IMG/VR virus record: IMGVR_UViG_3300025133_009608
Span: 124,001 to 188,000 of that record
Reading direction: 5' to 3' (one strand)
DNA length: 64,000 nt
The first letter of the stretch is position 1, and every line of letters begins with the position of its first letter. The notes below the pieces were generated by a model. It was not told the DNA's origin, made no database searches, and worked only from the letters and a program-made list of their open reading frames with translations. Shown here piece after piece: positions 17,773 to 60,684 of this stretch. Made by a program: the position numbers and the translations under genes.

Positions 17773-17789
17773 GAGGAAACTATTAGTAG

Positions 17790-20934: not shown

Positions 20935-20940
20935 TTAAAA

Positions 20941-25688: not shown

Positions 25689-27180
25689 CTAACAGCTCCT
25701 CGTGCGAAATGCTCCACTCATTTCGATGCTCCATTTTAATATCATTAATTATAGCGGTCGAGACTTTCACCTCGCCTTCTTCCTCCGGGTTTCCGGATAT
25801 TATATCTTCCGGTTTATACTTTAACTTAAGGATGGCCTCCTCGGAATCCGTAAGTCCTGAGTAATAATCAACCACAAACTCCTCTGAGGTTCCAATATAG
25901 ACCCCGTTCGGGTGTGAAATCATATTATCATTCCTGCCACCACTGTATGGGTATCGTATCTCGGGATTCTGCAAGGAGAATAATCCACGCTTATCCCTTC
26001 CGACTATCTTATACCCAGTTAGAAAACTATCCTTATATCTCTCCCTTCTTTCGCGAGTGACGTCATAAGAGTCTTTAGCGGCAGATAATAGCTGCTCGTC
26101 TGTAATGCCCTCCTTTAAATATCCATTTGAATATCCATAACTTTTAGCTAAGTGCCTTAACCTTAGCGCAAGCCCAGTGGCTCCACTATCATGAGCGTCT
26201 TCATATAAATAGCTCCTACCTCTATGCTCCGATTGCCCCATAAGGTATTCAAAGTGCATCTTTGAAAATTCTAACATTAATTCATTCAAGTCTCTGGATT
26301 GATGCTGGTGTTCCACATCAGAGCCTCCCGTGTTGCTCTCCCCTTGAAATCCCACTTCTGCCATCATGCTTCCAAGCTCTTCTTCTGCCTCTGCATATTC
26401 AACATCCAACGCCTCTGCGTTTGGCGAGCCGTCCTCGTAAGCATCCATTGATAGTTGATTTAGTTCTTCGAGCCTATGGATTCTACTTCTGATGTCTGCT
26501 GAGAGTCCGAATAAGTTGTATAAACTTTCGGGAGTATCCGCCCTAGACTCGTCCCCATACTCAAGAGATGCCGCCCTCCATAGTGCTGCCACCTTTAGCT
26601 CTCTGCGGTGCGGTCGGCACAATACCTTTTTCTGCTCCACGGTATGATGATGATTATCATCACCAAATGCACTAACACCAGAGGGTTCCGAAATAATCTT
26701 AATTGATTGATTTTCATTAAAACAATGAGATGATAGCTTCATAAAATACTTTATTGAAGCTTCTCTGTTGCTTTTGTCTTGAGGGTCATATGATATCCAT
26801 AGCGAATCAAACTCTGGGCCACTAGATGCTTCTTTGTCCGCTTCTTCCATCGACTCGGGAGTGTTCCTTAGGACCGCCTCCGCTTCATCTAATTCTATAA
26901 TCTTTGGGCCAATTAGATTTACGTCCCCGTCCCAAGTAACTTCCTCTACGAAGCCTTTGCTTGGGACTGTATCCGTTCGAAACATTACAGCTACGATGTC
27001 ATCGCTATCTATATGGGTATGTTGCACTTGCGGAAGATAAACCCCCCAGACTCCGGACACTGCAAAGTTAGAGTACCCACGCTCAACGGACAGCCTTCTT
27101 TCCGATACAATCTTCTTTGCAATTTCTCTATCAGCAAAGTGAATAAAGAAATCATTTTCTACTTTCTTTTCTACTCTCAC
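25681..27180 (-). CDS. multi-domain acidic hypothetical protein (499 aa)
   Basis: long ORF overlapping the downstream gene. Confidence 0.8.
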   Translation of the reverse strand: MRVEKKVENDFFIHFADREIAKKIVSERRLSVERGYSNFAVSGVWGVYLPQVQHTHIDSDDIVAVMFRTDTVPSKGFVEEVTWDGDVNLIGPKIIELDEAEAVLRNTPESMEEADKEASSGPEFDSLWISYDPQDKSNREASIKYFMKLSSHCFNENQSIKIISEPSGVSAFGDDNHHHTVEQKKVLCRPHRRELKVAALWRAASLEYGDESRADTPESLYNLFGLSADIRSRIHRLEELNQLSMDAYEDGSPNAEALDVEYAEAEEELGSMMAEVGFQGESNTGGSDVEHQHQSRDLNELMLEFSKMHFEYLMGQSEHRGRSYLYEDAHDSGATGLALRLRHLAKSYGYSNGYLKEGITDEQLLSAAKDSYDVTRERRERYKDSFLTGYKIVGRDKRGLFSLQNPEIRYPYSGGRNDNMISHPNGVYIGTSEEFVVDYYSGLTDSEEAILKLKYKPEDIISGNPEEEGEVKVSTAIINDIKMEHRNEWSISHEELLDE

Positions 27181-27340
27181 TGTTATTTATCCTAATAATA
27201 TTCAAATTAACTGTCCGAACCGCGAACTGAACCGACCACGTTATTAATAACAAAATTAGTAGTGGCGCTACCAAGAGATACGTCATGGGAATCATTATAG
27301 AATCGAATATATCATCCCATAGCGTTGAGAACTTACTCAT
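27152..27340 (-). CDS. small membrane protein
   Basis: single TM helix. Confidence 0.55.
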   Translation of the reverse strand: MSKFSTLWDDIFDSIMIPMTYLLVAPLLILLLITWSVQFAVRTVNLNIIRINNSESRKESRK

Positions 27341-27342
27341 AC

Positions 27343-27585
27343 TTAGCGCCTCTGAAGATCGGTTACGGTCATTACTCCCCAGTTATAATCGCTTCGAACG
27401 GAACCCTCCAGCCCCAACTCTTCCAGGGCGGCAAAAACCTCTCTCTGCATATCAATCGATTTACCTGTTATTACCTCGAACGGCAAAGCCCAATCGTTCT
27501 TCAAGAGAAACGACTCTATAGCCTTATAGACATCGCAGTGACGAACCCCGTGAAGATCTACGGAAGATGGCCTACCATTCCCCAT
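27343..27585 (-). CDS. stand-alone Smr-like domain protein
   Basis: VDLHGV ... VITGKS. Confidence 0.7.
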   Translation of the reverse strand: MGNGRPSSVDLHGVRHCDVYKAIESFLLKNDWALPFEVITGKSIDMQREVFAALEELGLEGSVRSDYNWGVMTVTDLQRR

Positions 27586-27982
27586 AGATCCTATTATCAG
27601 ATCCTTCTATTGGCATCCCATGATCCCAAGCGGCATGTGGAATATCCGCTCCGAGTCTTTCATTGTGCCTTTCGTTATCCTCCGGGGTGACAATCCAGCA
27701 GTTTAATGTGTTATCCACACCCATAGCATGATAGATGACCAGCCCATCTTCTTTCTCGGCCTTTATCTCGACCAGCTCTCCGAGAGCATCACGGCTATCT
27801 TTATTAATTTTATTGAAGAACTTTTCTACGGCGCTTCGTATCTCCGGGGACATTTCTTTTTCTCTTTTAAAGAAGTCGAACATACCAGCGCAATTTATAA
27901 TGATATTATCTATTTCATTTGCACCAGACTCAAGTCCCAGCTTATCTAGCTCATTTGCCAACCTAATTAGCTTGTCTAACAT
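27572..27982 (-). CDS. protein with N-terminal two-helix module
   Basis: MLDKLIRLANELDKLGLESGANEID. Confidence 0.8.
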   Translation of the reverse strand: MLDKLIRLANELDKLGLESGANEIDNIIINCAGMFDFFKREKEMSPEIRSAVEKFFNKINKDSRDALGELVEIKAEKEDGLVIYHAMGVDNTLNCWIVTPEDNERHNERLGADIPHAAWDHGMPIEGSDNRIYGEW

Positions 27983-27993
27983 ATTATTATCCT

Positions 27994-28623
27994 CTAGGAG
28001 ATTTCATCCATTATTTGCTCAACGACAGTATCGATATCCATATCTTTATCCCCTGTCTCTACGTCATCAGTCAGAGCGGCAGTAATCAGGTCAGAAAAAT
28101 AACTTGTTGCATCATACTCCTCAAACTGCTGAGGATCAGTGGCTCCGTTATCAAATACAAAGTTGAGCCGGTCACCATCCAAATAGATTACCTCTTCTTT
28201 CCCGTCCCACAAGTCCCATGGAGTCTCGGTTCTAGCGTGCCAAAACAAGCTCTCAATTAGCTCCGAAGCCTCAGGGCCAGCGCCAAGCTCTATTACTGCA
28301 TTCTTTTTTCTTTCTTCCAATGTAATTGACTCTTCATCATCTGGGCTATGCGGTTCTTCTTCGGTTCCCGCCATGATCTTTGCCGTTGCGATAGCATCCT
28401 CCTTATCTCCTGTGTGATAATGGTCATCGGTTCCAATTGAATCCGGAGGAATAACGCGGTACTCTTTCCATTCGGCGTTATAATAAACTTCCGCGCCTCC
28501 CACTGACAATACAAGGTCTTGAGAGTCGGACGCAAGCCTGACAACTCGGTCCAAAGCATCAGCCTCTTTTACAAGACCTCTTCCGTCCAATGTGTTTGCA
28601 ATTTTAATTAGTTCTTTTATCAT
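27994..28623 (-). CDS. acidic protein with N-terminal two-helix module
   Basis: MIKELIKIANTLDGRGLVKEADALD. Confidence 0.85.
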   Translation of the reverse strand: MIKELIKIANTLDGRGLVKEADALDRVVRLASDSQDLVLSVGGAEVYYNAEWKEYRVIPPDSIGTDDHYHTGDKEDAIATAKIMAGTEEEPHSPDDEESITLEERKKNAVIELGAGPEASELIESLFWHARTETPWDLWDGKEEVIYLDGDRLNFVFDNGATDPQQFEEYDATSYFSDLITAALTDDVETGDKDMDIDTVVEQIMDEIS

Positions 28624-28635
28624 TTTAGTTCTCCA

Positions 28636-29391
28636 TTAAATAACTATAACGCCATCATCTTTGTCGGCGGCTGCTATGAATATCTCTCGAATCGAGTGAA
28701 GCCTGTCGCTCAGATATTCGTCGGAAAGTCCAGAATCAATCATTCTCGCTCCCCTTTGCACGCTTATATCAAACGTGCCGTCATCCCTCTCTTTCATCAC
28801 TCGCGATTCGCGCCTTGTGTCTGATGGAGGAACAACGTGTTTTGCAATTTCGTCCGGGAGGTTTAATAGCCTGTTTATTTTTCGAATAACATTTGAGACA
28901 TCTTCTGCCGGTATCTCTAAAACATGTTCGTCAATGTAAAATCCAAGAATATTAAATAACTTTCTGGCGTTCCGATTTGACAAATTAACATAATCCTCTG
29001 CCAACTCGCTTCCGATGTGCATTCCCATGCCGTCGATAACTTGATCGTGCTTTAGGTCGCAGAGGTCAATAGGGTTCTTTCCATAGAATTTATTCTTTAG
29101 CTCCGCAAATCTTTCGGCGTTTTCTTCTATCCATGGGTCGTCGCTCTTGCCGTCGGAGACAAACTCTATATCATCCTTGGCTCTCTCGCACTTCCAGCAC
29201 TCATTGAGAACATCTTTCCACTCGGCATTCGCCCTTCGAACATCCATACTGGATGTCTTTAGTAATGAGGCGACCTTTTTAAACTCAGAGTAGTTGCCTT
29301 TAAGCAGCCACCGGCGCAACGCGGATAATGCCGCCTCGTCTTTCTCTTTCATGTTAGCTGCCTCTTCGGGCAAGGTTCTCGATAATTTCAT
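28636..29391 (-). CDS. hypothetical protein
   Basis: long coupled ORF. Confidence 0.8.
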   Translation of the reverse strand: MKLSRTLPEEAANMKEKDEAALSALRRWLLKGNYSEFKKVASLLKTSSMDVRRANAEWKDVLNECWKCERAKDDIEFVSDGKSDDPWIEENAERFAELKNKFYGKNPIDLCDLKHDQVIDGMGMHIGSELAEDYVNLSNRNARKLFNILGFYIDEHVLEIPAEDVSNVIRKINRLLNLPDEIAKHVVPPSDTRRESRVMKERDDGTFDISVQRGARMIDSGLSDEYLSDRLHSIREIFIAAADKDDGVIVI

Positions 29392-29908
29392 CGAGAATGT
29401 CAGCCTCTTTCGTTAAAGACTTTTGATCCAGCTCTGTGGCGATTTTTGATAGCCCCGTCAAAACAACAGAGGCTTGCGCGATAGGGTTATAAGCAGGAGT
29501 TAACCGAGCCAGGTCATCTCTCTCATCAGAGAGTCCCCATGCTGGGTGAGTGACATCATCTTTTGGCGCGAAATCTTGGTCACTTCGAGATACTGTTTCG
29601 GCTCCAACGCCAAGGTATATATCAAACATAGTAGATAGTTGATCCTCCATGCCTTGAAGCTTTTCCTTCCCGATAGATATCATATGATCCAATATCTCAA
29701 AGGGATCCTCTTCGTGCTCGCGGGCTTCAGCCTCGGCTTCTTCGAGCGAACTTTTCAAGGATTTAACTCCGCTCTGAAGCCCGGTAACAAGCTCCTGAAA
29801 GTCGGCCATATCAATAATCTTAGAGAACTCCATATCCCCTTCGATTACGGTGTCCTCGTCTGTTATCGCTTCTCTGTTGTCTTCGATTTCTATTTTTTCA
29901 TTTGACAT
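29354..29908 (-). CDS. acidic protein with C-terminal two-helix module
   Basis: C-terminal GLSKIATELDQKSLTKEADILDEII. Confidence 0.8.
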   Translation of the reverse strand: MSNEKIEIEDNREAITDEDTVIEGDMEFSKIIDMADFQELVTGLQSGVKSLKSSLEEAEAEAREHEEDPFEILDHMISIGKEKLQGMEDQLSTMFDIYLGVGAETVSRSDQDFAPKDDVTHPAWGLSDERDDLARLTPAYNPIAQASVVLTGLSKIATELDQKSLTKEADILDEIIENLARRGS

Positions 29909-30784
29909 CTTTCGTCTTTCCTAAAAATACTTTTGGTTTCTGCCCGTACTTTGTACATTGACTATCAATTTATTAGTAGCTTTGTTTTTCGGGAATTTTT
30001 TATTTTTATTTATTTTTAATATTCAGAAATCTCGGCTTGATTTGTTCTGTTGTCTTTGGTTGGTTTTCTTTCGTTATAAAAACCCACGGACCCCGAAGTT
30101 CTATAAAATATAATCCCATACCATATAGCGGGCCAGACTTTATATTTATACGAAAGAGCCGGAGGCTCTTTTATTATAAACTTATCTTATTTGGCCCACC
30201 ATGTAACCTCTGGGGGCTTGGGCTCTTTGGAATCCGTGGGCTCCTAGTTTATTATCTTTTTAAACCCCTCATCATACAGTCCGGCTTTTTCCGGTGAGCT
30301 CTGACGACAAAATTTTAAGCGAGCAGAAAAATTTATATAAAAAACTTTAAAAAAAAATTATAGGAAATTTTTAGGGGGTGCCGTTCTTATATAAAAAACA
30401 TAAAAAATTGAGCAAATTGGGCAACCACCCTACGTGCTTTATCTGCTTTTTCCCAGAAAACCCCAAAAAAAACTGCCGCGAAATAAGCTTCTCTGCGCCC
30501 CAGAAAAAAGACCTCCTCGCTCTCAGAAAAAAGACCTTCTCTCTCTCAGGAATAAAAAGACTCCCCTGTGGGAATAAAGGCCTCTCTACCCCCTATGGAT
30601 TTATTATCTTTATTCTTCTTTATGTTCTCTACCCTATAAGGATAAAAAGAATCCAAAGGACTATGGATAGCTTTTCTTTTATTGTATTCTCCTATAGAGG
30701 TATTGGGCTGGGGGTTATCCTTTTTATTATCCTATTCAACAACTGGGATAATTTATTTATTTATTGTGGGGTCGCTGGATTATA
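29909..30784. other. ~875-bp non-coding, homopolymer-rich block with ~23-bp tandem repeats (origin candidate)
   Basis: no minus-strand ORF; CAGAAAAAAGACCT at 30501 and 30524, degenerate copies at ~30547 and ~30570. Confidence 0.5.
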
Positions 30785-31123
30785 TTATCGTTCAAAATTT
30801 CTCAGATCAATTAGATCTTGCTGCCTCTCCCCCTCCCAATACTCGCGCTCCTCGTAGCCTGACAGGTTCTCGACGTAATCGTAATATGCCTCTTCATAAA
30901 TATCTTTGATTCTTGCCATCGATTGAGCTATCCTGATCATATCGTCGGGGTCCCTAGCCTCTTTCATTTCTTTTGTTAATTCCTTTAGACGAGCTGCTGG
31001 GTCCATGCGCTCGTCTTCTTCTTTCTCTGTCGCCTTCTTTATAATAGAATCTAGATAGTCTGCTTCTTTCGAAAGACCCTTGCTATCTAAGTGAGTTGCT
31101 AATTTTATTAATTCTTTAATCAT
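30785..31123 (-). CDS. protein with N-terminal two-helix module
   Basis: MIKELIKLATHLDSKGLSKEADYLD. Confidence 0.85.
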   Translation of the reverse strand: MIKELIKLATHLDSKGLSKEADYLDSIIKKATEKEEDERMDPAARLKELTKEMKEARDPDDMIRIAQSMARIKDIYEEAYYDYVENLSGYEEREYWEGERQQDLIDLRNFER

Positions 31124-31143
31124 TGTTTAATCCTTGTTTAATC

Positions 31144-31623
31144 CTAACAGCTTTTAATATGTCCCGACACGATATTCTCCCTGGATATCCGCCCATCATT
31201 GTCCAGCTCCCAAGTTAGCTCAACACTAAGCATCCCGGTATCTCCCGTGTCCATATGCATTGCATCTCGTAGGAATTCATAATTCTTACATTTCCATGAT
31301 AGTATAATTTGGTTTCCTTCTTCGCTCTTCTCTGCACATGAGTGATTATTAACATCGCCGTTGCACACCGGATTCACATCTATGGCGGCACCAGAATCAT
31401 CATAAATAAATTCAAAATCTATTTCGCCATTTGTCTCCGAAGATAGATCATCTTTAGATACCGGCTTACACCCAGAGGCTCCTGTTGCGGCAACAGCAAA
31501 ACATAGTGCGATCATAATCGGGGCTATTGCCTCCTTCTTTATAATAGAATCTAGATAGTCCGCCTCTTTCACAAGGCCTCTGCTGTCCAATTCGTTTGCT
31601 AATTTTATTAATTCTTTAATCAT
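31144..31623 (-). CDS. protein with N-terminal module followed by a hydrophobic segment and a lipobox-like ASGC
   Basis: MIKELIKLANELDSRGLVKEADYLD ... IMIALCFAVAATGASGC; start re-assigned. Confidence 0.8.
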   Translation of the reverse strand: MIKELIKLANELDSRGLVKEADYLDSIIKKEAIAPIMIALCFAVAATGASGCKPVSKDDLSSETNGEIDFEFIYDDSGAAIDVNPVCNGDVNNHSCAEKSEEGNQIILSWKCKNYEFLRDAMHMDTGDTGMLSVELTWELDNDGRISRENIVSGHIKSC

Positions 31624-31662
31624 TGTTCCATTTTCCTTAAGAATACATTTCAACGTTGAATA

Positions 31663-32247
31663 TTAATAGTTAAAACTTGCTCTATCAAACTTCCCTGAGA
31701 ATAGAACTTCTTTGTTTTCTTCTATCTTGTCGTCGGGCCATTCCCACCATTTTAATTTAAGTAGAAACTCAATGTCTTCATCGCTAAATCTTTTCCTTAT
31801 TTGCTTGGCCGGGTTCCCTCCGACGATAGCATATGGCTCCACATCTTTTACGACGTTTGCATTGGCAGCAATGACCGCTCCATCCCCGATGGTTACTCCC
31901 GACATTACAGTTGCTCCAAACCCAATCCACACATCGTTTCCGATTGTAATGTCACCATTTGATATGATTCCCGGCTCTTCTATATCATAGTGAAGGTATG
32001 TTGATGTACGTTCGGCGATATGATTTCCGCCCAAGAAAAATATGCAGTTGGTTGCTATCGAGCAATAGTCTCCAATTATTAATCGTGCATCTTCTTTTGC
32101 ATTCGGTGTCGTTTCCCATAAGAAGACTTTAGAGCTTGGGACAAAAGAGGATGTTGAGATCGTGGTTCTGGGTCCCAGAATTACTTTCGCCTCTCCTCCG
32201 AGAGTTTTGTTTATCTCTCTGTAGTTAGCTAAATCATAAATTATCAT
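31663..32247 (-). CDS. hexapeptide-repeat O-acetyltransferase (Vat/CatB xenobiotic acyltransferase-like)
   Basis: IGDYCSIA, IGNDVWIG, IGDGAVIAA, PYAIVGGNPAK.IRKRF, KWWEWP. Confidence 0.9.
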   Translation of the reverse strand: MIIYDLANYREINKTLGGEAKVILGPRTTISTSSFVPSSKVFLWETTPNAKEDARLIIGDYCSIATNCIFFLGGNHIAERTSTYLHYDIEEPGIISNGDITIGNDVWIGFGATVMSGVTIGDGAVIAANANVVKDVEPYAIVGGNPAKQIRKRFSDEDIEFLLKLKWWEWPDDKIEENKEVLFSGKFDRASFNY

Positions 32248-32258
32248 TTTCTAATTAT

Positions 32259-32624
32259 TTAAATTACTTGCATCTCTGGAGTATTCATTTCAGCCGAGTG
32301 ACCATCCAGCGGCGAATCCAATGAGAGCTCAACTATATCAAATGAGGCGCCGTGCGGCTGGCCTTCCGAGGCGGTATCTTCCGCCCAAGTTTCTTTGTAT
32401 TCTTCTTTTACTGATTCATTGTTCCAAGATTTATAATTACTAATAGCCTCTTCCGCTTTGGCTCTAGAGCTATATGCCCCCTCCACTCCCGTGGTGCTAA
32501 AGCTATCCTCTCCCAAGCTTCTATGTGCTGCGACAACAACATAAATTAAATTATTACTTTGTGCTTCTTTTATAAGATTACTATAATTTCTATCTGATGC
32601 TATCTTTATTAATTCCTTAATCAT
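32259..32624 (-). CDS. protein with truncated module (MIKELIKIASDRNY)
   Basis: first helix of module fused to KIASDRNY. Confidence 0.8.
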   Translation of the reverse strand: MIKELIKIASDRNYSNLIKEAQSNNLIYVVVAAHRSLGEDSFSTTGVEGAYSSRAKAEEAISNYKSWNNESVKEEYKETWAEDTASEGQPHGASFDIVELSLDSPLDGHSAEMNTPEMQVI

Positions 32625-32683
32625 TATTCTTTATCCTTCTTAATTATTACGAGGCTGCTTCATCTTCCTGATGGGGCCACTTG

Positions 32684-33166
32684 TTATCGCTCATAATTCT
32701 GCATAAAAAATTCGTCTTGATGGTCGCCCTCTCCCATCTCAGCAACATACTCTTCAGCGGTCTGCTTCTCGCGATTATCAAGATCGTGGGGGGCGTTACG
32801 GCCCTCTTCATCTCGGAATCTCTCCATCATATTCACCATATTAGTCAAAAACTCTTTGCCCGCGCCTTCAACAGAGTAGCTGCGATCGACTAGACTTTTA
32901 AGAGTTCTTTGATGCTCTCCTGAGTTTCTCAGAACATAGGTCAAATCCTCTTGTGATAGGCCCGGAACCAGATCTCCCAAGATATTAGCCAGAGCACCTT
33001 CAAATTGCTCAATATAATTATCGCCAGTATTTCTTGTCAGAGTGTGAATGGTTTCGTTATCAACACCCAGAGAAGCCCGCTTAATAACCGTATCCAAATA
33101 GTCTGCTTCTTTTGCCAAGCCTCTTTCATCCAGATGAGTAGCTAATTTTATTAATTCTTTAATCAT
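32684..33166 (-). CDS. protein with N-terminal two-helix module
   Basis: MIKELIKLATHLDERGLAKEADYLD; GGAG RBS. Confidence 0.85.
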   Translation of the reverse strand: MIKELIKLATHLDERGLAKEADYLDTVIKRASLGVDNETIHTLTRNTGDNYIEQFEGALANILGDLVPGLSQEDLTYVLRNSGEHQRTLKSLVDRSYSVEGAGKEFLTNMVNMMERFRDEEGRNAPHDLDNREKQTAEEYVAEMGEGDHQDEFFMQNYER

Positions 33167-33788
33167 TTGCACTCTCCATCTCTTCTAATTCTTCATCTCG
33201 CATGTTCTTATAAAGATTAAACTGATCCAGAGCGGTGGCGGTTAACGCCTTTGCTACATTCTTTTCGATAAAATACCTATAGTAATCATTTCCCCTAGCC
33301 ATGCGCGAATGGATTTCATGTGCCATCTCATTGACAAAACTTTTTAATCCTTCTTCTGCGAATTGAGCCTGACTGTGAGCTCGATCATCAGAGTTCCAGC
33401 GCCTTTCTTCATTCTCTTCCCGGGACCCATGCTCCTCAAATAGGAAGCTTATAACGCCACTCATAGAGTGCGCGCCCACTTGCGCGGGTGCGGTGTTATA
33501 CACCACGTCCCCATCCGGCCCTGACTTATCGTCAAATAGAACTATATTAAACCCGACGCTATCATCATATCGAAGCTCCGCTGCCGGAGTTATCTCATAT
33601 TTAAATAAATCCGCTCCATCGAGTTCACTTCCATTATAAATAATCTTTTCATCGGTTGATTCCACCAGGGTCAGGGAGCCTATTCTCTCTGGCCATGTGG
33701 TGTCTTTCGACTCTGCAATTTTATTTAAATTATAATTATTGATACTCGCTATCCTCTTGAGATTGCTTCTTTGTGATATCTTTTTCAT
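33159..33788 (-). CDS. acidic hypothetical protein
   Basis: start re-assigned to MKKISQ (GGGAGAG RBS); KRIAS/NKIAES N-terminus. Confidence 0.8.
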   Translation of the reverse strand: MKKISQRSNLKRIASINNYNLNKIAESKDTTWPERIGSLTLVESTDEKIIYNGSELDGADLFKYEITPAAELRYDDSVGFNIVLFDDKSGPDGDVVYNTAPAQVGAHSMSGVISFLFEEHGSREENEERRWNSDDRAHSQAQFAEEGLKSFVNEMAHEIHSRMARGNDYYRYFIEKNVAKALTATALDQFNLYKNMRDEELEEMESAND

Positions 33789-33841
33789 TTTACAACTCTC
33801 CCTATAAATACATTTCAATGTTGATTATTAATAGTTTATTT

Positions 33842-34147
33842 TTAAAATAAAAAATCCAAATGGAACAGTAATTTTCCGGCGATTTCTTTCGGGCAATTAT
33901 CTAATATATAATCTGATGATACTTGCTTATAGAATATTTCTTTATGATTGTCGGTGACCGGGGATATGGTGCCGGTCAAAGACCTTCCGGATGGAACTAC
34001 CGATACAATAGTCTTAACTCTCCACTGTGGGCCGAGGGCGTTTATATTTAAAACAAACTCTGTACCCTTAAGTATAAACTCTCCTCTTTCAAGCGAAATG
34101 GGAGAGAATAATCCGGTCTTAAAAACTTTTGAAGATAATGGGGACAT
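33842..34147 (-). CDS. hypothetical protein with C-terminal LLFHLD motif
   Basis: shares C-terminus with 48047..48337. Confidence 0.7.
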   Translation of the reverse strand: MSPLSSKVFKTGLFSPISLERGEFILKGTEFVLNINALGPQWRVKTIVSVVPSGRSLTGTISPVTDNHKEIFYKQVSSDYILDNCPKEIAGKLLFHLDFLF

Positions 34148-34156
34148 TATTAAATA

Positions 34157-34351
34157 CTAAAGATTTATTCCCAAAATCTTCTTAACCTTGTCAAGAAGGC
34201 CTATTATCTTTTCGCTGGCTTTGATATTTAATTCTATAAGCTTGCGAACGCAGTAGCCAAGGCCCGATAAAAAAAGCAGCACCACCATAAGGACCATTGC
34301 AATTAAAAAAGATATAATATTTAATACCTTTCCCATGACTATCTGGAACAT
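34157..34351 (-). CDS. small membrane protein
   Basis: hydrophobic helix. Confidence 0.55.
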   Translation of the reverse strand: MFQIVMGKVLNIISFLIAMVLMVVLLFLSGLGYCVRKLIELNIKASEKIIGLLDKVKKILGINL

Positions 34352-35238
34352 TAAACGATCGCCGTTGTTGAAGTTCCGGAATCCAAAAACGCAAGACCTT
34401 CTTGGCTTACCGATTCAATCTTCATGTGCACGTGCGGGCGAGCATCACCCGTTTCATCTCCAACTCTTCCGGAAATTAATCCGCGACTTACAGCCTCTCT
34501 TGCGACCGCAAGGGCTCCGGGGGTATTTCTAAGATCAAATGCAATACCGCGGGCGTGATTTGACATAGGGTGAGAAGTCAGCCTTCTCTCTGCGCAGCTT
34601 AGTGATTCGGCATCTGTTGCCATCTCAAAGCAGTCTGCTACAGCGTTTGCGTTATCAGGCTGAGAACTATACAATCTTACTAGATAATCTCTGCCTCTTT
34701 GCGCATCTCCGTTGCCGTTACTTTTATAATTGTTATACATCGCACGCGCCTGCCTGCCTGGGCCTCTAAATCCGGACGTCATAACCAGCGGTGGATGCCC
34801 CATCTCTTCTGCTAACAGCGCTAGAATATCTGCCGCCTTCTTTGCATCTGAGTCTAGGCCGCTATAATCAACTCCATCTTTTATTTCTATAATTGATTCT
34901 CCGGAATAATTTCTTGGACTGACCCTCTGGCGTCTCACCCAAGGAGATGTCGCCTCTGGAGGAACATATCTTCCGCGAACAGAGCTCGCTCCTCCGGCCC
35001 AAGGAGATGTCGCCTCTGGGGGAACATATCTTTGAGTATTGCCCGGCCGAGAGGCGGGAGTAGAGCTTGCATACTGAGAGGATGCTGGACCTTGGCGGTC
35101 CGTCCCATAGAATAGCTCATCTGAGTGCTGCTGTAATATATCTTGAAACCCAACGGCAAGTTTTGTTATCTCGTCAGACTCACTTTGGAGTCCTAGGTCT
35201 TTTAGTTTTTTTGCCAATAATTTTATTTTATCATTCAT
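34351..35238 (-). CDS. peptidase M15-fold Zn peptidoglycan peptidase with degenerate N-terminal module
   Basis: TSGFR..RQ, SNHARGIAFDL (SxHxxGxAxD), HVH; KIKLLAKKLKDLGLQSESDEI; RYVPPEATSPW x2. Confidence 0.8.
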   Translation of the reverse strand: MNDKIKLLAKKLKDLGLQSESDEITKLAVGFQDILQQHSDELFYGTDRQGPASSQYASSTPASRPGNTQRYVPPEATSPWAGGASSVRGRYVPPEATSPWVRRQRVSPRNYSGESIIEIKDGVDYSGLDSDAKKAADILALLAEEMGHPPLVMTSGFRGPGRQARAMYNNYKSNGNGDAQRGRDYLVRLYSSQPDNANAVADCFEMATDAESLSCAERRLTSHPMSNHARGIAFDLRNTPGALAVAREAVSRGLISGRVGDETGDARPHVHMKIESVSQEGLAFLDSGTSTTAIV

Positions 35239-35379
35239 TTTATACCCATGCGCGCGTACATACATTAAGATTTAATATTAGTAATCATAACTTTTTAGTT
35301 ATACTTAAATTATATAAAAATAGCTATACATGTCGATAGATGGATATATTTATATAATTTATCTCACCCCTTGTTCTGG

Positions 35380-35730
35380 CTATTTCTCAAGCATATCATC
35401 TTCATAATCAAGCCATATGGAGCCATAATTAAAAAAATCACTCCATGCCGTATAGTCGCCCTCATAAGCCAAGAGCCCAGACGATGAAGTCAGATCATAA
35501 AAATTACTTCCAGAATCATGTGTTAGCGGAAATAATATAGACCCACCTGGCGCGCTGTGAGCGCCAGGCTGGCTGGGATGAGTTGGGTTATTATTCTGAA
35601 GAAACTCATCTATATCGCTCTTCTCAACATCGGCAAGGATTAATTTATCTGTCGCAATACTAAAAAGTGAGTATTTATTATCATCAGTTTTTACAAAGTA
35701 AAATTTTGTCTCCGCAAATAAGTCGAGCAT
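35380..35730 (-). CDS. hypothetical protein
   Basis: AGGA RBS. Confidence 0.7.
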   Translation of the reverse strand: MLDLFAETKFYFVKTDDNKYSLFSIATDKLILADVEKSDIDEFLQNNNPTHPSQPGAHSAPGGSILFPLTHDSGSNFYDLTSSSGLLAYEGDYTAWSDFFNYGSIWLDYEDDMLEK

Positions 35731-36414
35731 TTTGTTTTCCTTTTGTTTAATAAAATAGATTATAAGCCCTTCTCAAAATGGGACGAAAAAAGCTCACATC
35801 CTACTTCAATTATTAGTTGAAAAAAGACATGAGCTTGGCTATCTTGGCAGTAGAACTGGAATATAAAATATATTTTATTCCGTGGCGCTTTGCGGTTCTA
35901 TTTGGCATTATTAATAATCAAAGCAAGTTCCTAGATTTTAAGCAAAAGAATAACCAGATAAAACGTTTATCTTATCTTGTTAAACACTATATATAATTAT
36001 ATAGAACTATCCTTACTGCTACATAAGAAATCGAGATTATTTATATTAAAAATATCTGATCTAATATTTTAATGAGTTGTCAACTTTTTGCCCAAAAATT
36101 TTTTGACATATCTTGAATATCAACTTCACATCTTTTTTGAACTTAAAGCATATAGAGATATAATATTAGACCAGATAGTATCAAAGTATATGGTCTTTAT
36201 TTGATATACCGTTGCATCTAATAGTTTAATTATTATAGATGATATGGTGTAAAAATATCTTTACGGGAAGTCAATTTTTTGCCCAAACACCCATTGCCGT
36301 GTCAATGGCGCAATAACCTCCGGGCCGAAAAGTTCGATAAATAAGATCGATTTATTATAGTAAAGTGTAAGGGGAAAGGCCTCTTGCGCCCTACTCACAA
36401 CCAAGGAAAATAAA

Positions 36415-36849
36415 ATGAGTATTTCACTATTCAATGATCAGAAGGATGTCTCCTCTGTTCAGACCATTCGCGAGACGATGAACGTCTCGCTCAGCGACGA
36501 TGGGACCCCCATCGTTTCGTTTGCCACAAATCGCGGCAAGGGATCTGGGGCTCAGTCTATGGCTGTCGCTGATTACGCCGAGTATGTCGCGGCTCTTAGT
36601 CACTTTGCTTCTAACGGAATTGAAGAGATTCCAACTGAAGACCTCTCTCCTGCGGAGACTGTCCGTCAGACTATCGCCCTTGATGACTCTGGAGTGATCT
36701 CATTCCGAGTGAAGAGCGGGAAGGGCTCAAAGCCAGCTAAGGTTGGCGCCGGAGAGTTCTCTGAAGTTACCGATCTTCTTCGCTCTACCCTTGAGGCGGT
36801 TGAAGCGGCTGCTGCCCGCCTCACTGGAAGTGACACTGAAGAAGAGTAG
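36415..36849 (+). CDS. MSISLFNDQK paralogue 1; internal tandem repeat, putative PC4/PUR-like ssDNA-binding protein
   Basis: two repeats IVSFATNRGKGSG / ISFRVKSGKGSK; own promoter (36333) and terminator. Confidence 0.8.
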   Translation: MSISLFNDQKDVSSVQTIRETMNVSLSDDGTPIVSFATNRGKGSGAQSMAVADYAEYVAALSHFASNGIEEIPTEDLSPAETVRQTIALDDSGVISFRVKSGKGSKPAKVGAGEFSEVTDLLRSTLEAVEAAAARLTGSDTEEE

Positions 36850-36870
36850 TAACTACTCTCAATAAAGCTA

Positions 36871-36908
36871 AGGCTCCACTGGTTTAATCCCCGGTGGAGC
36901 CTTTCTTT
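36871..36908 (+). terminator. intrinsic terminator
   Basis: AGGCTCCAC/GTGGAGCCT stem plus TTTCTTT. Confidence 0.8.
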
Positions 36909-37006
36909 GCTTAAGATGTCAAACTTTTGCCCAAGTGATCGATCTTTTCATAATAAATCCTCCTTGTTGCGATAGGTGCGATTGGCATGTCTTTTATTTA
37001 TTTTAC

Positions 37007-37213
37007 CTATATCTTCTTAAGCCCTTCGACCTCGCCTTCAAGCTCGAAAATTGAGACGTATGGTGTATTGCGTTCAATGGCCTGATCCCTTGCAGCTTTA
37101 AGTATAGCAAGCGCACTATCAAGAGCTGCATTCCAAGCGGCAGATTCCTTCGCGGAGCAATCCTCACTGCTCTTCCTCAGTCTATAATTTCTATCTGCCG
37201 CAATCTTTCTCAT
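37007..37213 (-). CDS. small protein starting MRKIAADRNY
   Basis: GGAGG RBS; shares 26 nt with neighbour. Confidence 0.7.
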   Translation of the reverse strand: MRKIAADRNYRLRKSSEDCSAKESAAWNAALDSALAILKAARDQAIERNTPYVSIFELEGEVEGLKKI

Positions 37214-37292
37214 AACAAATCCTCCGAGATTTAACACTTCTATCTTACAGATGCCCTATTGAGCAATCCCAATGCCGGCCAAGATTGAGAAG

Positions 37293-37670
37293 TTACTCAA
37301 TAGACAGATCGTCATATTCAGTCTGTCCGCCAAGATGTTGCTCCCGCCGCCTCTTTTGATTTTCGGACAGCGCTCGAACAATCTCAATCGATATATTTCG
37401 AATTGTCTCAGAGATTGTTGGATCAACATTAAGATGACCGCTGTTCTGTAAATGGCCAATCCAATGGGCTACATTGTCAACATCTTCCTCAAATCCTGCC
37501 ATATCCAGTTCTAAGCTGTAGCCCTTAGAGTTCGACCCTAATTCGTCCATAGCGTATTTATAATTTCTATCTGCCGCAATCTTTTTAATCACAGAGTCCA
37601 AATAGTCCGCTTCTTTTGCCAAGCCTCGCTCATCTAGATGAGTCGCTAGCTTAATCAGTTCTTTAATCAT
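37293..37670 (-). CDS. protein with N-terminal two-helix module plus KIAADRNY
   Basis: MIKELIKLATHLDERGLAKEADYLDSVIKKIAADRNY. Confidence 0.85.
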   Translation of the reverse strand: MIKELIKLATHLDERGLAKEADYLDSVIKKIAADRNYKYAMDELGSNSKGYSLELDMAGFEEDVDNVAHWIGHLQNSGHLNVDPTISETIRNISIEIVRALSENQKRRREQHLGGQTEYDDLSIE

Positions 37671-37818
37671 TATTGTAGATCCTCCGAGATTTATTATCTC
37701 TATATTTATTTAACAGTTCTATCTTGATTATTAATATATTGTCAAACTTTTGCCCAATAAATCAATCAACACATTTCGGCATCCTGCCGAATATTCCCCG
37801 TTAAAGCAGGAGGATGCC

Positions 37819-54167: not shown

Positions 54168-54479
54168 TTATAGGCACTCATCTCTTCGGGCATCGGAGTA
54201 AAGCCCCGCAACCGATGACGCCAACTCGTTCTCTTCTTGAATCCATATTGAATAACCTCGTCGATATTCTTCGATGTCAATGGTTCCATTTTGAAACTGT
54301 AAAACTTTTGCCCTATACTCAGTACGGGCATCATCACGGAGTTCTTGTATTTCTAAGATTTTGCCCACCACAGAATAACAATCTCTATTAGAGATTATCA
54401 GCCAACCAAGCCATGTAGCAGGAGATAGAAAGATAATGGTAATAATAAACGCCATTATCTTTCTATTGTCCACACGCAC
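54168..54479 (-). CDS. membrane-anchored coiled-coil protein
   Basis: N-terminal TM; GGAG RBS. Confidence 0.7.
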   Translation of the reverse strand: MRVDNRKIMAFIITIIFLSPATWLGWLIISNRDCYSVVGKILEIQELRDDARTEYRAKVLQFQNGTIDIEEYRRGYSIWIQEENELASSVAGLYSDARRDECL

Positions 54480-54529
54480 TCCCGCTCACTATATGCAAAT
54501 ATAGTAGCATGGATTTTCAATAGTCCAGT

Positions 54530-54763
54530 TTGAATCTACTATTTTTAGAAACTGAACCGATGGAAGAGGATATAAAAAAACTAAAATCTGGAGACACTGT
54601 TGAAATAAAGTGCAAAACAGGACTGTACAGAATCGTGAAGATAATCACTACTGATGGTCACAACTTTACCTCAAAGATATCTACCAGTGGGCCCAAGAAA
54701 ATATCATTTATCGCAGATGATATTACAAGAATCATTGGCAAATCAAAATGTCGTTGTCATTAG
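54530..54763 (+). CDS. hypothetical protein
   Basis: isolated + ORF; start uncertain. Confidence 0.5.
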   Translation: MNLLFLETEPMEEDIKKLKSGDTVEIKCKTGLYRIVKIITTDGHNFTSKISTSGPKKISFIADDITRIIGKSKCRCH

Positions 54764-54945: not shown

Positions 54946-55196
54946 TGTTCTCCTCTCTTGTACTGGGCCATACAGCCGATATATTCCTTTGTAGTATAGT
55001 GATCTACAACAAAGCCGCTGGAGAGTAATGCGTTTTCAAGATTTTCTGAGATTTTATATTGCCAATACATGCTCGGCCTACCCGCGCGCGCGCAGAACTC
55101 CGCATTTCGGATCATAGTTCTGTCCTTGTCGGCCGAAGCCATATAGGTAACGACAAGGTCTCTAATAAATCTTGAATACATTTCACCCTCCACCAA
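54942..55196 (-). CDS. hypothetical protein
   Basis: downstream of degenerate promoter 55198. Confidence 0.6.
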   Translation of the reverse strand: MVEGEMYSRFIRDLVVTYMASADKDRTMIRNAEFCARAGRPSMYWQYKISENLENALLSSGFVVDHYTTKEYIGCMAQYKRGEQ

Positions 55197-55293
55197 TAAC
55201 TTTCATATCGATCTTATTTATCGAAAAGTTGGATTGCCCGCTGTCCGTAAAAAATATTACGATCTGGGCAAAAGTTTTGCGCATGTAAATAAA

Positions 55294-55466
55294 GGCACCC
55301 AGCGGTCAAGTGGGTGCCGTTTTTTCTAAAGCCATTCATTGGCTCACCATACGCGCTTGACCGCGTATGGGTTTTTTATCTTTAGACGGCGGGTAGCGTA
55401 ACCGAGATTTGGGGGAGGTGCACAATAAGCTACCGCCCGATTTGTCTTGCCGCCCCGCCATCTAAA
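55294..55466. ncRNA. four-hairpin structured element with complementary loops (kissing-loop candidate)
   Basis: hairpins 55294-55318, 55330-55344, 55347-55370, 55381-55466; loop GCGGTCAAG is the reverse complement of CTTGACCGC in hairpin 3. Confidence 0.55.
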
Positions 55467-55474
55467 AAATAACT

Positions 55475-55714
55475 TTACTGCCTGAGGATTAGCGTGGAAA
55501 CCGTATGATCTGCACACCAGTCGCTTGCAAATGCCATGCCTCGACCAACATCAAGGGCCGTATCGTGACCCAGCTGTGATGGTAAATCGAAATCAAATCG
55601 CGATGCGTTTAGGCAATCTTCTTCGTCGTTTTCAAAATACTCGATCAACTCGTCGATGGTTTCAAAATCATCCATCGTTCCGATGATAAATATATATTCT
55701 GTAACTTCATTCAT
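55475..55714 (-). CDS. acidic hypothetical protein
   Basis: AAGGAG RBS; promoter 55736. Confidence 0.75.
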   Translation of the reverse strand: MNEVTEYIFIIGTMDDFETIDELIEYFENDEEDCLNASRFDFDLPSQLGHDTALDVGRGMAFASDWCADHTVSTLILRQ

Positions 55715-55908
55715 TTTTCTATCTCCTTATGCTTTACTATAATAAATCGATCTTATTTTCCGAATAAAGGCGGAAGCCCACAAAGAAAATGAGGTTTTGT
55801 CCAGACCCCAAACTGGAGGCTTGCCTTGGGAGTCTCGTTTTCTGCCAGAGTTTATTCCAAGGTTTGTTTGCAGGTTGGCATCCTGCCTGCACTCCGAAGC
55901 CGTAATCA

Positions 55909-56163: not shown

Positions 56164-56225
56164 TCTTTCTATTCTCCCTTCATATCACTATAATGAATCG
56201 ATCTTATTTATGGAAGAATCCTTTA

Positions 56226-58400: not shown

Positions 58401-58471
58401 TTTCTATCTCCTTATGCTTTACTATAATAAATCGATCTTATTTATCGAACAAGTCATGGAGTTTGTCCTCC

Positions 58472-60495: not shown

Positions 60496-60572
60496 TGGCT
60501 GGGGCAGTAGGACTCGAACCTACAACGGCCGGGGTAACAACCCGGTGCGACTGCCAGTGTCGCCTCACCCCA
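60496..60572 (-). tRNA. trnN: tRNA-Asn(GUU), second divergent copy
   Basis: CCGGG-TTGTTAC-CCCGG anticodon arm; GTAGG-TTCGAGT-CCTAC; G73; CCA. Confidence 0.85.
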
Positions 60573-60608
60573 TCTGCACGTAAGTACGTTTATATTAGCA
60601 TAGAAAAG

Positions 60609-60684
60609 TGGTGGGTCGAGAGGGGCTCGAACCCTCGGCCGATCGGTTAAAAGCCGATTGCTCTACCAACTGAGCTACCAACCC
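60609..60684 (-). tRNA. trnK: tRNA-Lys(UUU)
   Basis: ATCGG-CTTTTAA-CCGAT anticodon arm; canonical D and T arms; CCA. Confidence 0.93.

What the first reader, a model, noticed from the sequence alone, without database searches (positions are those of the whole stretch)
55294..55466. Four-hairpin element whose loops are mutually complementary (kissing-loop or switch RNA)
Seen (minus strand, downstream of 55475..55714): a ~86-nt long hairpin (TTTAGATGGCGG/CCGCCGTCTAAA, whose U-G pair is valid only on minus); CCATACGCG-GTCAAG-CGCGTATGG; AGCCA/TGGCT; and GGCACCCA-CTTGACCGC-TGGGTGCC followed by TTTATTT. The entire 9-nt loop CUUGACCGC is the exact complement of GCGGUCAAG, which is the 6-nt loop plus 3 stem nt of the other hairpin. 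Inference: a tertiary kissing interaction or conformational switch controlling termination, or a small ncRNA. A weaker alternative is tandem antisense terminators, since both hairpins have T-runs on the + strand.
Basis: partly seen in the sequence, partly recalled or inferred. Interest (0 to 1): 0.6.

Follow-up and report, generated by a model that had tools for sequence, protein, structure and literature searches.

The report
Conserved phage RNA with kissing loops
The four hairpins are real and belong to a previously undescribed, evolutionarily conserved structured noncoding RNA of a small group of marine giant phages, in which two hairpin loops appear to base-pair with each other; its function is unknown.

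Summary
On the minus strand, window 55287-55466 holds an 86-nt irregular hairpin, three short hairpins (H2, H3, H4) and a U-rich tail. The H4 loop CUUGACCGC is the exact complement of GCGGUCAAG in H2. The window lies in a 316,664-bp marine virus record. The element is single-copy there and matches no Rfam family.

Seven further contigs from related uncultured marine phages carry it, in four sequence types. It is better conserved than its flanking genes, which differ between types; in one type it follows a tRNA-Arg gene.

All helices are supported by compensatory changes. In the three-hairpin module 181 of 181 cells pair and 10 pairs change on both sides. G-U pairs show that the gene-strand RNA is the functional one.

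Only 7 nt of the loop complementarity are conserved (GGUCAAG:CUUGACC). This is a single evolutionary event.

A termination switch is not favoured: the alternative fold is 5-14 kcal/mol worse in every type. Only the window has a canonical U-tract after H4. Antisense terminators do not explain the data.

Verdict: a new structured phage RNA family with a probable kissing-loop lock. No transcription data exist.

The parts
55381..55466 (-). 5' domain: 86-nt irregular long hairpin. Basal 13-bp stem is 55454-55466 with 55381-55393.
   Evidence: Sequence and fold. Compensatory changes occur in the basal and middle helices across types. The partial variant from run X12 adds G-C to A-U and G-C to U-G changes.
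55425..55441 (-). Apical hairpin of the 5' domain, AU(C)GGGC-GGUA-GCUUAU. The family consensus is AU(C)RRGC-RGUA-GCUUAU.
   Evidence: This is the common structure found by RNAalifold on 7 sequences. G-U changes to A-U on one side, and the G-C and C-G pairs are invariant.
55404..55419 (-). C/A-rich unpaired 3' strand of the 5' domain (CACCUCCCCCAAAUCU). It forms an asymmetric internal loop in the family consensus.
   Evidence: Alignment A7: C/A-rich in all types, with a conserved CAAA(A)YC core. It pairs with the 5' strand only in types A and B.
55347..55370 (-). H2: CCAUAC(GCG)-GUCAAG-(CGC)GUAUGG. The outer 6 bp are conserved. The inner 3 bp are present only in the window and the X12 variant.
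   Evidence: Compensatory A-U to G-C and C-G to U-A changes.
55356..55362 (-). Loop-loop partner 1: GGUCAAG, extended to GCGGUCAAG (55356-55364) in the window only.
   Evidence: Invariant in types A, B and C; GGCCAAAG in type D.
55329..55345 (-). H3: GAGCCA-AUGAA-UGGCUU, a variable peripheral hairpin.
   Evidence: Four of 6 pairs change on both sides. In type D it is replaced by two hairpins of about 50 nt in total.
55294..55318 (-). H4: GGCACCCA-CUUGACCGC-UGGGUGCC.
   Evidence: The stem covaries in L034 (GAUAGCCA/UGGCUGUC) and in L028 and L044 (GGCGACCA/UGGUCGCC), with 3 pairs changed on both sides.
55304..55310 (-). Loop-loop partner 2: CUUGACC, extended to CUUGACCGC (55302-55310) in the window only.
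   Evidence: Invariant in types A, B and C; CUUGGCC in type D, matching the U to C change in H2. Pair 17-121 is U-A in 5 sequences and C-G in 2. Pairing is 49 of 49 cells in register against at most 31 of 43 in any shifted register.
55287..55293 (-). U-rich tail UUUAUUU after H4. With H4 it forms a canonical intrinsic terminator in this genome.
   Evidence: Relatives have UACAUYUUUUC instead.
55475..55714 (-). Upstream gene P0001 (79 aa, unknown function). Its stop codon lies 8 nt before the long hairpin, with no promoter in between.
   Evidence: The family member next to the element is 56% identical in type B, and the upstream gene is unrelated in types C and D.
55266..55273 (-). TTTTGCCC motif, a likely promoter or regulatory site, 14 nt downstream of the U-rich tail. 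It marks the start of the next control region.
   Evidence: 38 copies in the genome against about 10 expected. It follows the element in types A, B and C and precedes the tRNA-Arg that is followed by the element in type D.
55191..55227 (-). Early-type promoter copy (ATAAATAAGATCGAT...) of the downstream gene P0002 (54942-55181).
   Evidence: Repeat family D1, 31 copies in the window.

Best explanation
Window 55287-55466 (minus strand) encodes one member of a previously undescribed family of structured noncoding RNA, about 180 nt here and about 215 nt in the most distant relatives. The family is found in a small clade of uncultured marine giant phages.

The RNA is transcribed on the gene strand as the tail of an upstream unit. 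That unit is a small early gene in types A, B and C, and a tRNA-Arg gene in type D. The RNA ends at or near H4.

It has two domains. The 5' domain is a long irregular hairpin with a covarying basal stem, invariant internal sequence, an RGUA-capped apical hairpin and a C/A-rich unpaired strand. The 3' domain has three hairpins. The loops of the first and third (GGYCAAG and CUUGRCC) base-pair in a kissing interaction of 6-7 bp. The middle hairpin is a variable peripheral element.

Shown: the helices, the strand, conservation above that of the flanking genes, independence from any one neighbouring gene, and co-variation of the two loops.

Inferred: the kiss locks the 3' domain into a compact fold. 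H4 plus the U-rich tail sets and protects the 3' end. The RNA works as an autonomous structural RNA, either a protein- or RNA-binding scaffold or a self-associating RNA, like other phage RNAs found among tRNA genes. It is not inferred to be a regulator of one particular gene. The biochemical function is unknown.
For: Conservation:
- The element is 87.8% identical between the window and L013 and 74.7% identical to L017. The adjacent P0001 family is only 56% identical in protein, and P0002 is 74.5% identical in DNA.
- The flanking genes differ between types.
- There is one copy per genome.

Structure:
- On 3 full-length types, 95.9% of cells pair and 9 pairs change on both sides. Slid controls give 0-2 such pairs, and 0 of 500 shuffles reach the observed value.
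- On 7 sequences of the 3' domain, 181 of 181 cells pair and 10 pairs change on both sides.
- The 5' domain has 17 consensus pairs, 5 of them compensatory.

Strand:
- 17 G-U cells against 3 A-C cells on the minus-strand reading.
- The element is on the same strand as the adjacent tRNA in type D.

Kissing interaction:
- The complementary loops are invariant in types A, B and C.
- In type D (L028, L044) U changed to C in H2 and A changed to G in H4, so U-A became C-G.
- Pairing is 49 of 49 cells in register and at most 31 of 43 when shifted.
- The isolated loop-loop duplex is -8.9 to -9.4 kcal/mol.

Other support:
- Variable H3 and a mix of 1-nt and longer indels are typical of a structured RNA, and no ORF is conserved.
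- No Rfam family matches any type.
Against: - No transcription data exist. All 13 sequencing runs holding the DNA are DNA metagenomes.
- The family is small: 8 contigs in 4 sequence types.
- The loop-loop covariation is one evolutionary event, shared by the sister contigs L028 and L044, and it comes with a 1-nt insertion that leaves a bulged A.
- A change on both arms of an inverted repeat can also arise by template switching, or through a co-evolving DNA-binding protein.
- Covariation cannot tell an intramolecular kiss from an intermolecular one.
- The alignment used for the nested helices was fitted to the model. The pseudoknot columns were not modelled.
- The H4 loop of the X12 variant could not be read.
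- The function is entirely inferred.
Confidence: 0.7

Rival explanations
1. Termination switch or riboswitch-like cis-regulator. Pairing of GCGGUCAAG with the H4 loop competes with H2 and H4 and decides whether transcription reads through into the downstream gene.
For: In the window H4 with UUUAUUU is a canonical terminator. The 9-nt complement would form a stable long-range helix. In type D no promoter-like motif lies between H4 and the next gene, so that gene may depend on read-through.
Against: The forced long-range helix gives folds 5-14 kcal/mol worse than the hairpin fold in all six sequences tested. The segments pair with the terminator loop, not with a terminator arm. The two extra pairs are not conserved. 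The U-tract is interrupted in types B, C and D. The downstream gene differs between types, and in types A, B and C a promoter-like motif follows H4.
Confidence: 0.1
2. Ordinary 3'-end furniture. The long hairpin is an RNase III site or mRNA-stabilising hairpin, followed by terminator hairpins, with no tertiary pairing. The loop complementarity is a by-product, for example of an inverted duplication or template switching.
For: The element starts 8-12 nt after a stop codon in types A, B and C. The early-gene region holds many strong hairpins after genes. The loop-loop covariation is a single event.
Against: Terminators and stabilisers do not usually keep unpaired sequence. Here loops, linkers and the C/A-rich strand stay conserved while the flanking genes are replaced. 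The element follows a tRNA in type D. It is unique in the genome, so it is not this phage's general terminator type. The loops stay complementary in 7 of 7 sequences.
Confidence: 0.12
3. Tandem plus-strand (antisense) terminators. H4 and H2 read on the plus strand are each followed by a U-run and would stop antisense transcription, for example from the plus-strand ORF 54530-54763.
For: The plus-strand reading of H2 is flagged as terminator-like. The A-runs 5' of H2 and H4 on the minus strand, which are U-runs on the plus strand, are conserved in all types. A plus-strand promoter-like site and ORF lie upstream at 54291-54763.
Against: G-U pairs on the minus strand become A-C mismatches on the plus strand: 17 cells against 3, with 6 more in the 3' domain. 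The 5' domain, H3 and the loop covariation are unexplained. No converging gene lies near the element in types B, C or D.
Confidence: 0.04
4. DNA-level element. GGTCAAG and CTTGACC are inverted half-sites for a dimeric DNA-binding protein. GTCAA also occurs in the TGTCAAnnTTTTGCCC motif.
For: The repeat is an exact inverted repeat. Both half-sites changed together in type D. GTCAA recurs in the phage's regulatory motif.
Against: The half-site spacing is 45 nt in types A, B and C but about 80 nt in type D. The type D half-sites are not symmetric, because of the extra A. Each half-site sits in the loop of a hairpin whose stem covaries with strand-specific G-U pairs. GGTCAAG is not enriched in the genome: 26 copies against about 39 expected.
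Confidence: 0.04

Closest known systems
ROOL and GOLLD RNAs (large ornate phage and prophage RNAs; Rfam RF03087, RF01998)
   Same: They are phage-encoded, of unknown function, often sit near tRNA genes, and have covariation-supported kissing loops. In ROOL, a loop-loop pairing first read as tertiary proved to be intermolecular in the cryo-EM cage (bioRxiv 10.1101/2024.12.08.627333). Here type D lies directly after tRNA-Arg.
   Different: They are about 580 and about 800 nt, against 180-215 nt here. There is no covariance-model match. The architecture differs, and no multimer has been shown for this RNA.
manA RNA motif (Rfam RF01745), found in marine cyanophages and Photobacterium
   Same: It is a short (under 200 nt) structured RNA of marine phages with unknown function. 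It was recently shown to self-assemble (bioRxiv 10.64898/2026.07.01.735769).
   Different: There is no covariance-model match in any of the four Rfam searches. manA is described as a 5'-UTR element; this RNA has no constant downstream gene.
Intramolecular kissing loops of riboswitch aptamers (purine L2-L3, lysine P2-P3, cobalamin L5-L13)
   Same: Two hairpin loops of one RNA pair by Watson-Crick complementarity to lock a multi-helix fold. In cobalamin riboswitches one partner belongs to the regulatory hairpin. This comparison rests on my own knowledge and was not tested here.
   Different: No ligand-binding core was recognised, there is no consistent regulated gene, and there is no plausible alternative expression-platform fold.
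Intrinsic (Rho-independent) terminators and 3'-UTR-derived small RNAs
   Same: H4 plus UUUAUUU in the window has the terminator anatomy, and the element is the 3' tail of a short transcription unit.
   Different: The loop is 9 nt and sequence-conserved. The U-tract is interrupted in relatives. A conserved 150-nt structured region lies upstream.
Stable RNAs of unknown function in the phage T4 tRNA gene cluster (species 1 and 2, rnaC and rnaD)
   Same: They are small stable RNAs encoded with phage tRNAs and co-transcribed with them. This comparison rests on my own knowledge and was not tested here.
   Different: The T4 RNAs are not known to contain kissing loops.

Membership tests
Any Rfam 15 family (including ROOL, GOLLD, manA, ribozymes, riboswitches, Y RNA, 6S) | A covariance-model match at or near the gathering score | tested here: not met
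   The window at gathering threshold gave only tRNAs and tmRNA. At E up to 10 on 55000-55800 the only hit was JUMPstart at 14 bits, E = 5.4. L017 and L020 gave nothing on the element. L028:3280-3680 gave only the tRNA and noise.
Kissing-loop (loop-loop) interaction | Two hairpin loops with at least 6 nt of Watson-Crick complementarity, kept in homologues | tested here: met
   GGUCAAG:CUUGACC in types A, B and C; GGCCAA(A)G:CUUGGCC in type D. Pairing is 49 of 49 cells in register.
Kissing-loop (loop-loop) interaction | Compensatory change across the two loops | tested here: met
   The pair at columns 17-121 is U-A in 5 sequences and C-G in 2. This is one evolutionary event only.
Kissing-loop (loop-loop) interaction | Physical pairing shown by probing, mutant rescue or a solved structure, and whether it is intra- or intermolecular | not testable with these tools
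   No pseudoknot-aware or 3D RNA tool was available, and there are no experimental data.
Intrinsic terminator (H4) | G+C-rich stem, a short loop, and a U-tract immediately 3' of the stem | tested here: inconclusive
   In the window the stem is 8 bp (6 G-C), the loop is 9 nt, and the tail is UUUAUUU, which is canonical apart from the long loop. Relatives have UACAUYUUUUC, with the proximal U-tract interrupted.
Riboswitch or termination switch | Mutually exclusive alternative folds of similar stability involving the terminator | tested here: not met
   The forced long-range helix is 5.3-13.8 kcal/mol worse than the minimum-free-energy fold in six sequences.
Riboswitch or termination switch | Consistent association with a functionally related downstream gene | tested here: not met
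   The downstream gene is P0002 in type A, an 88-aa gene in types B and C, and an unrelated 123-aa gene in type D. Promoter-like motifs intervene in types A, B and C.
Retron msr/msd RNA (considered because a long hairpin sits next to small hairpins) | An adjacent reverse transcriptase gene, and msr before msd on the transcribed strand | tested here: not met
   The order fits only the plus strand, which the G-U evidence excludes. No large ORF is adjacent.
Repeat or mobile element (MITE, REP) | Several copies per genome | tested here: not met
   There is a single copy in the 316-kb genome by BLAST and by covariance model. The 26-bit hit at genome 100619 overlaps a gene start on the opposite strand.
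Small protein-coding gene | A conserved ORF with a start codon | tested here: not met
   The 41-aa ATG ORF of the window (55336-55461) loses its ATG in type B. Open frames shift between types, and both 1-nt and longer indels are present.

The most novel reading that the evidence does not exclude
The H2 and H4 loops pair between molecules rather than within one. Each RNA would then offer a head (GGYCAAG) and a tail (CUUGRCC) and assemble head-to-tail into closed rings or cages. That would make it a third or fourth case, and a small one at about 180 nt, of phage-encoded self-assembling RNA, alongside ROOL, GOLLD and manA. In type D the H2 loop also contains the palindrome UUGGCCAA, which could additionally support homodimers.
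Probability: 0.15. Interest if true: 0.8.

Novelty: new member of a known kind. Interest (0 to 1): 0.6.

Why it matters
Giant phages carry many unexplained noncoding regions. Few phage RNAs have covariation support, and fewer still have evidence for a tertiary or quaternary contact.

This one is compact enough (about 180 nt) for direct structural work. It has a built-in test: single and double loop mutants that reproduce a natural compensatory change. It sits in the early-gene and tRNA part of the genome, as the ROOL and GOLLD RNAs do, and their function is a long-standing open question.

If the kiss is intermolecular, the RNA would extend the newly found class of self-assembling natural RNAs. 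If it is intramolecular, it is a clean new example of a kissing-loop-locked three-hairpin fold attached to a terminator.

Tried and rejected
Searches that found nothing:
- Rfam: four searches gave no match for the element.
- GenBank phages: DNA searches with three variants of the element and with the locus, and protein searches with both flanking genes, gave nothing.
- IMG/VR: five pattern scans gave nothing beyond the own record, which is left out of that collection. The two scans with the flanking proteins also found no relative. The DUF3228 neighbour found three loci with no synteny.
- JGI metagenomes: the pattern scan returned only the window's type and type B.
- GTDB genomes: the first scan found nothing. 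The second gave 5 hits, about the number expected by chance, and the covariance model rejected them at 11.5 bits or less.
- Protein search: P0001 has no homologue by word search.
- Identical copies from other samples carry no variation.

Other copies in the genome:
- The decamer TAGATGGCGG occurs four times, but the other three copies are in coding sequence.
- A 13-nt identity between H4 and a hairpin at genome 206018-206075 is borderline (E = 0.74) and was not pursued.
- The covariance-model hit at genome 100619 is spurious.

Expression:
- No RNA run holds the locus.
- Contigs laid on the locus gave a fourth variant, but its H4 loop lies too close to the aligned end to be reported. I reconstructed only 55317-55475, and used it only inside a script.

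Interpretations rejected, with reasons in the rival and membership sections:
- A small ORF, a retron, a repeat or MITE, a DNA operator, a -1 frameshift or readthrough signal (the UUUUUUA after the stop codon is not conserved in type C), and anti-Shine-Dalgarno mimicry by CACCUCC (present only in types A and B).

Full report
**Setting**

The window is bases 124001-188000 of a 316,664-bp virus record with 43% G+C, judged 94% complete. The record comes from marine metagenomes: every run that holds the locus is a marine or hydrothermal-vent DNA metagenome.

The window carries seven tRNA genes and a tmRNA gene. In the part that holds the finding, it is an array of small minus-strand genes. Each gene has its own copy of a conserved promoter, ATAAATAAGATCGATTnATTATAG, with 31 copies in the window.

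The finding lies in the 293-nt gap between two such genes: P0001 (55475-55714) and P0002 (54942-55181).

**The observation**

- An 86-nt long hairpin at 55381-55466, whose basal stem contains a U-G pair.
- H2 at 55347-55370.
- H3 at 55329-55345.
- H4 at 55294-55318, followed by UUUAUUU.

The H4 loop CUUGACCGC is the exact complement of GCGGUCAAG in H2. This 9-mer occurs only at these two places in the window; shuffles give a mean of 0.33 matches.

The region folds far better than shuffled sequence on both strands, with z = -5.3 on the minus strand and -4.6 on the plus strand.

Perfect G+C-containing hairpins with stems of 8 bp or more are rare in this genome. There are 46 in 316 kb, and H2 and H4 are adjacent members of that set. 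A complementary loop pair between them is therefore not what chance would give.

The element is single-copy in the genome.

**Finding relatives**

Direct DNA and pattern searches found only identical copies of the same phage in other samples. P0001 has no detectable homologue by word search.

P0002 has a 76%-identical homologue, P0004. The contigs carrying it (L013-L021) contain the element. L013 is 87.8% identical to the window over 181 nt, and L017 is 74.7% identical over 162 nt.

This is more conserved than the flanking genes. The P0001-family protein next to the element in L013 is only 56% identical, and P0002 is 74.5% identical in DNA. In these relatives an extra 88-aa gene lies between the element and the P0002 homologue.

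Homologues of that 88-aa gene led to more contigs. A covariance model of H2-H3-H4 (R1) found the element in L034 and L035 (94 bits), L040 (107 bits), L028 (53 bits) and L044 (40 bits).

A Logan contig from a hydrothermal-vent run (X12) gave a further partial variant.

The family so far has four types:
- Type A: the window, plus the partial X12 variant.
- Type B: L013, L040 and L034.
- Type C: L017.
- Type D: L028 and L044.

No GenBank phage, IMG/VR contig or GTDB genome holds it by the searches I could run.

**It is an RNA structure, read on the gene strand**

On the three full-length types, 95.9% of cells form standard pairs and nine pairs change on both sides. Slid controls give 0-2 such pairs, and 0 of 500 shuffles reach the observed value.

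On seven sequences of the 3' module, all 181 cells pair and ten pairs change on both sides:
- H2: A-U to G-C and C-G to U-A.
- H3: four of six pairs.
- H4: three pairs. GGCACCCA/UGGGUGCC becomes GAUAGCCA/UGGCUGUC in L034 and GGCGACCA/UGGUCGCC in type D.

The X12 variant adds the intermediate G-U states in H2 and a G-C to A-U change in the apical helix.

The 5' domain keeps a common architecture in all types:
- A covarying basal stem.
- Two short invariant helices.
- An apical hairpin AU(C)RRGC-RGUA-GCUUAU.
- A C/A-rich unpaired 3' strand.

Seventeen cells are G-U on the minus-strand reading, against three A-C cells that would be G-U on the plus strand. In type D the element lies on the same strand as the adjacent tRNA.

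No ORF is conserved. The window's 41-aa ATG ORF loses its start in type B, and open frames and indels shift between types.

**The loops**

The 9-nt complementarity is specific to the window. In types B and C the inner three pairs of H2 are lost (AAG...CGA and AAG...CGC). This makes the H2 loop 12 nt long, and the two extra pairs to the H4 loop are gone. What is kept is GGUCAAG in H2 and CUUGACC in H4.

In type D the H2 loop reads UUGGCCAAAGCAA and the H4 loop reads CUUGGCCUC. The U became C and its partner A became G, so U-A became C-G, with one extra A bulged out.

Counted as a pseudoknot helix that the covariance model did not contain, all seven pairs hold in all seven sequences, and one pair shows the double change. 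Pairing is 49 of 49 cells in register and at most 31 of 43 in any shifted register.

It is one evolutionary event, since L028 and L044 are sister sequences, so I treat it as good but not conclusive support. My rough estimate, not a tool result, is that if the only two substitutions in 14 loop columns were independent, they would hit partner positions with the complementary base about 1 time in 40.

**Kiss or switch**

If the complementary segments are forced into a nested long-range helix, H2 and H4 must open. The best such fold is then 5.3 to 13.8 kcal/mol worse than the hairpin fold in all six sequences tested. The isolated loop-loop duplex is worth -8.9 to -9.4 kcal/mol on top of intact hairpins.

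The segments pair with the loop of the terminator hairpin, not with one of its arms. The canonical U-tract (UUUAUUU) exists only in the window. All other types have UACAUYUUUUC, and the window's version looks like a 6-nt insertion before the shared UACAU.

A loop-loop lock therefore fits the data, and a termination switch does not.

**Context**

The element has no constant neighbour.
- Upstream: a P0001-family gene in types A and B, an unrelated small ORF in type C, and tRNA-Arg(CCU) about 40 nt away in type D.
- Downstream: P0002 in type A, the 88-aa gene in types B and C, and an unrelated 123-aa gene in type D. The type D flanking proteins have no homologue in the window's genome.

No promoter-like motif lies between the upstream unit and the element.

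The motif TTTTGCCC occurs 38 times against about 10 expected and is concentrated at window 36-62 kb. It follows H4 in types A, B and C. In type D it sits 9 nt before the tRNA-Arg that precedes the element.

The simplest reading is that the RNA is made as the 3' part of whatever unit lies upstream and ends at H4. I infer that it is an autonomous module that selection keeps while its neighbours are exchanged.

H3 behaves as a peripheral variable arm. It is a 6-bp hairpin in types A, B and C and two hairpins of about 50 nt in type D.

**What it resembles**

No Rfam family matches any type.

In kind, it is closest to the phage-encoded structured RNAs of unknown function that cluster with tRNA genes, namely ROOL and GOLLD, and to the short marine phage motif manA. 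For ROOL, a covariation-supported loop-loop pairing first read as tertiary turned out to be intermolecular in an RNA cage (bioRxiv 10.1101/2024.12.08.627333). RNAs under 200 nt, including manA, have since been reported to self-assemble (bioRxiv 10.64898/2026.07.01.735769).

Covariation cannot separate the intramolecular and intermolecular readings here. I give the intermolecular reading about 15%.

**Rivals**

- Tandem antisense terminators would explain the conserved A-runs 5' of H2 and H4, which read as U-runs on the plus strand. They would not explain the strand-specific G-U pairs, the 5' domain, the loop covariation, or the absence of converging genes in the relatives.
- A pair of DNA half-sites for a dimeric protein would also covary. 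However, the spacing changes from 45 to about 80 nt, the type D sites are asymmetric, and the sites sit in hairpin loops whose stems covary at the RNA level.
- Plain terminator and stabiliser hairpins without a tertiary contact remain possible if the single loop event was produced by template switching.

**Limits**

- There is no evidence of transcription, and no 5' or 3' ends are known.
- The family has only four sequence types.
- There is only one loop-loop event.
- The H4 loop of the X12 variant is unread.
- The nested-helix counts on A6 come from an alignment fitted to the model.
- The function is inferred from anatomy and analogy only.

Noticed in passing
window 3552-63823, e.g. 55730-55766, 56181-56217, 58415-58451: A highly conserved promoter-like repeat (minus-strand reading ATAAATAAGATCGATTnATTATAG, followed about 25 nt later by a ribosome-binding site and a start codon) precedes nearly every small gene. 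The window holds 31 copies. A few copies lie on the plus strand, for example after 36277 and 47413. It looks like the early promoter of this phage.
   Followed up: partly
window 36086-62017 (e.g. 36086, 36925, 37748, 47345, 54306 on +; 55266, 57339, 58777, 59892 on -); L028:3287-3294: The motif (T)GTCAAnnTTTTGCCCAA occurs 38 times in the genome against about 10 expected and is concentrated in this window. It often lies 35-55 nt upstream of the early promoter. In type D relatives it lies 9 nt upstream of tRNA-Arg. It may be a second promoter class or an activator site.
   Followed up: partly
window 11597-11999 (-), plus tRNAs at 2117-2761, 16501-18578 and 60496-60684: The phage encodes its own tmRNA (tag peptide ANNNNHFYAAALAA, 96.9 bits against Rfam RF00023) and seven tRNAs, all on the minus strand.
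   Followed up: no
window 20861-37683: A family of 5-9 repeats of 78-100 nt, 60-85% identical, ends in ...TTAATTAATTCTTTAATCAT. These appear to be the 5' ends of paralogous minus-strand genes, suggesting a multi-copy gene family spaced 500-7000 nt apart.
   Followed up: no
window 54376-54475 (-): This is the most over-structured 100-nt stretch of the genome on the minus strand (z about -4.8). It is an A+U-rich, near-perfect 17-bp hairpin (AUAGAAAGAUAAUGG...CCAUUAUCUUUCUAU) flanked by two further hairpins, next to plus-strand TTTTGCCC motifs and the plus-strand ORF 54530-54763.
   Followed up: no
window 54530-54763 (+): A single plus-strand ORF (67-77 aa, called as a gene in several public records) sits inside the minus-strand gene array. 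A sigma-70-like site lies at 54291-54319. Its transcript would run antisense through P0002 towards H4.
   Followed up: no
genome 206018-206075 (outside the window): Another strong hairpin (AACGGCACCCACUG...CAGUGGGUGCCGUU) shares 13 nt, AACGGCACCCACU, with the 5' arm of H4. The match is borderline by chance (E = 0.74).
   Followed up: partly
L030 (NZAS01000011.1, 69 kb): A contig binned as 'Candidatus Pacearchaeota archaeon' carries a homologue of the phage 88-aa gene together with SprT-like and metallophosphatase genes, in the same arrangement as marine phage contigs. It is probably a phage contig placed in the wrong bin. It lacks the RNA element within 2 kb.
   Followed up: no
L028:1634-3380 and L044:2031-4393: Type D relatives carry tRNA-Lys(UUU), tRNA-Leu(UAA) and tRNA-Arg(CCU) interspersed with small ORFs. 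The element is the last structured RNA of this island.
   Followed up: partly
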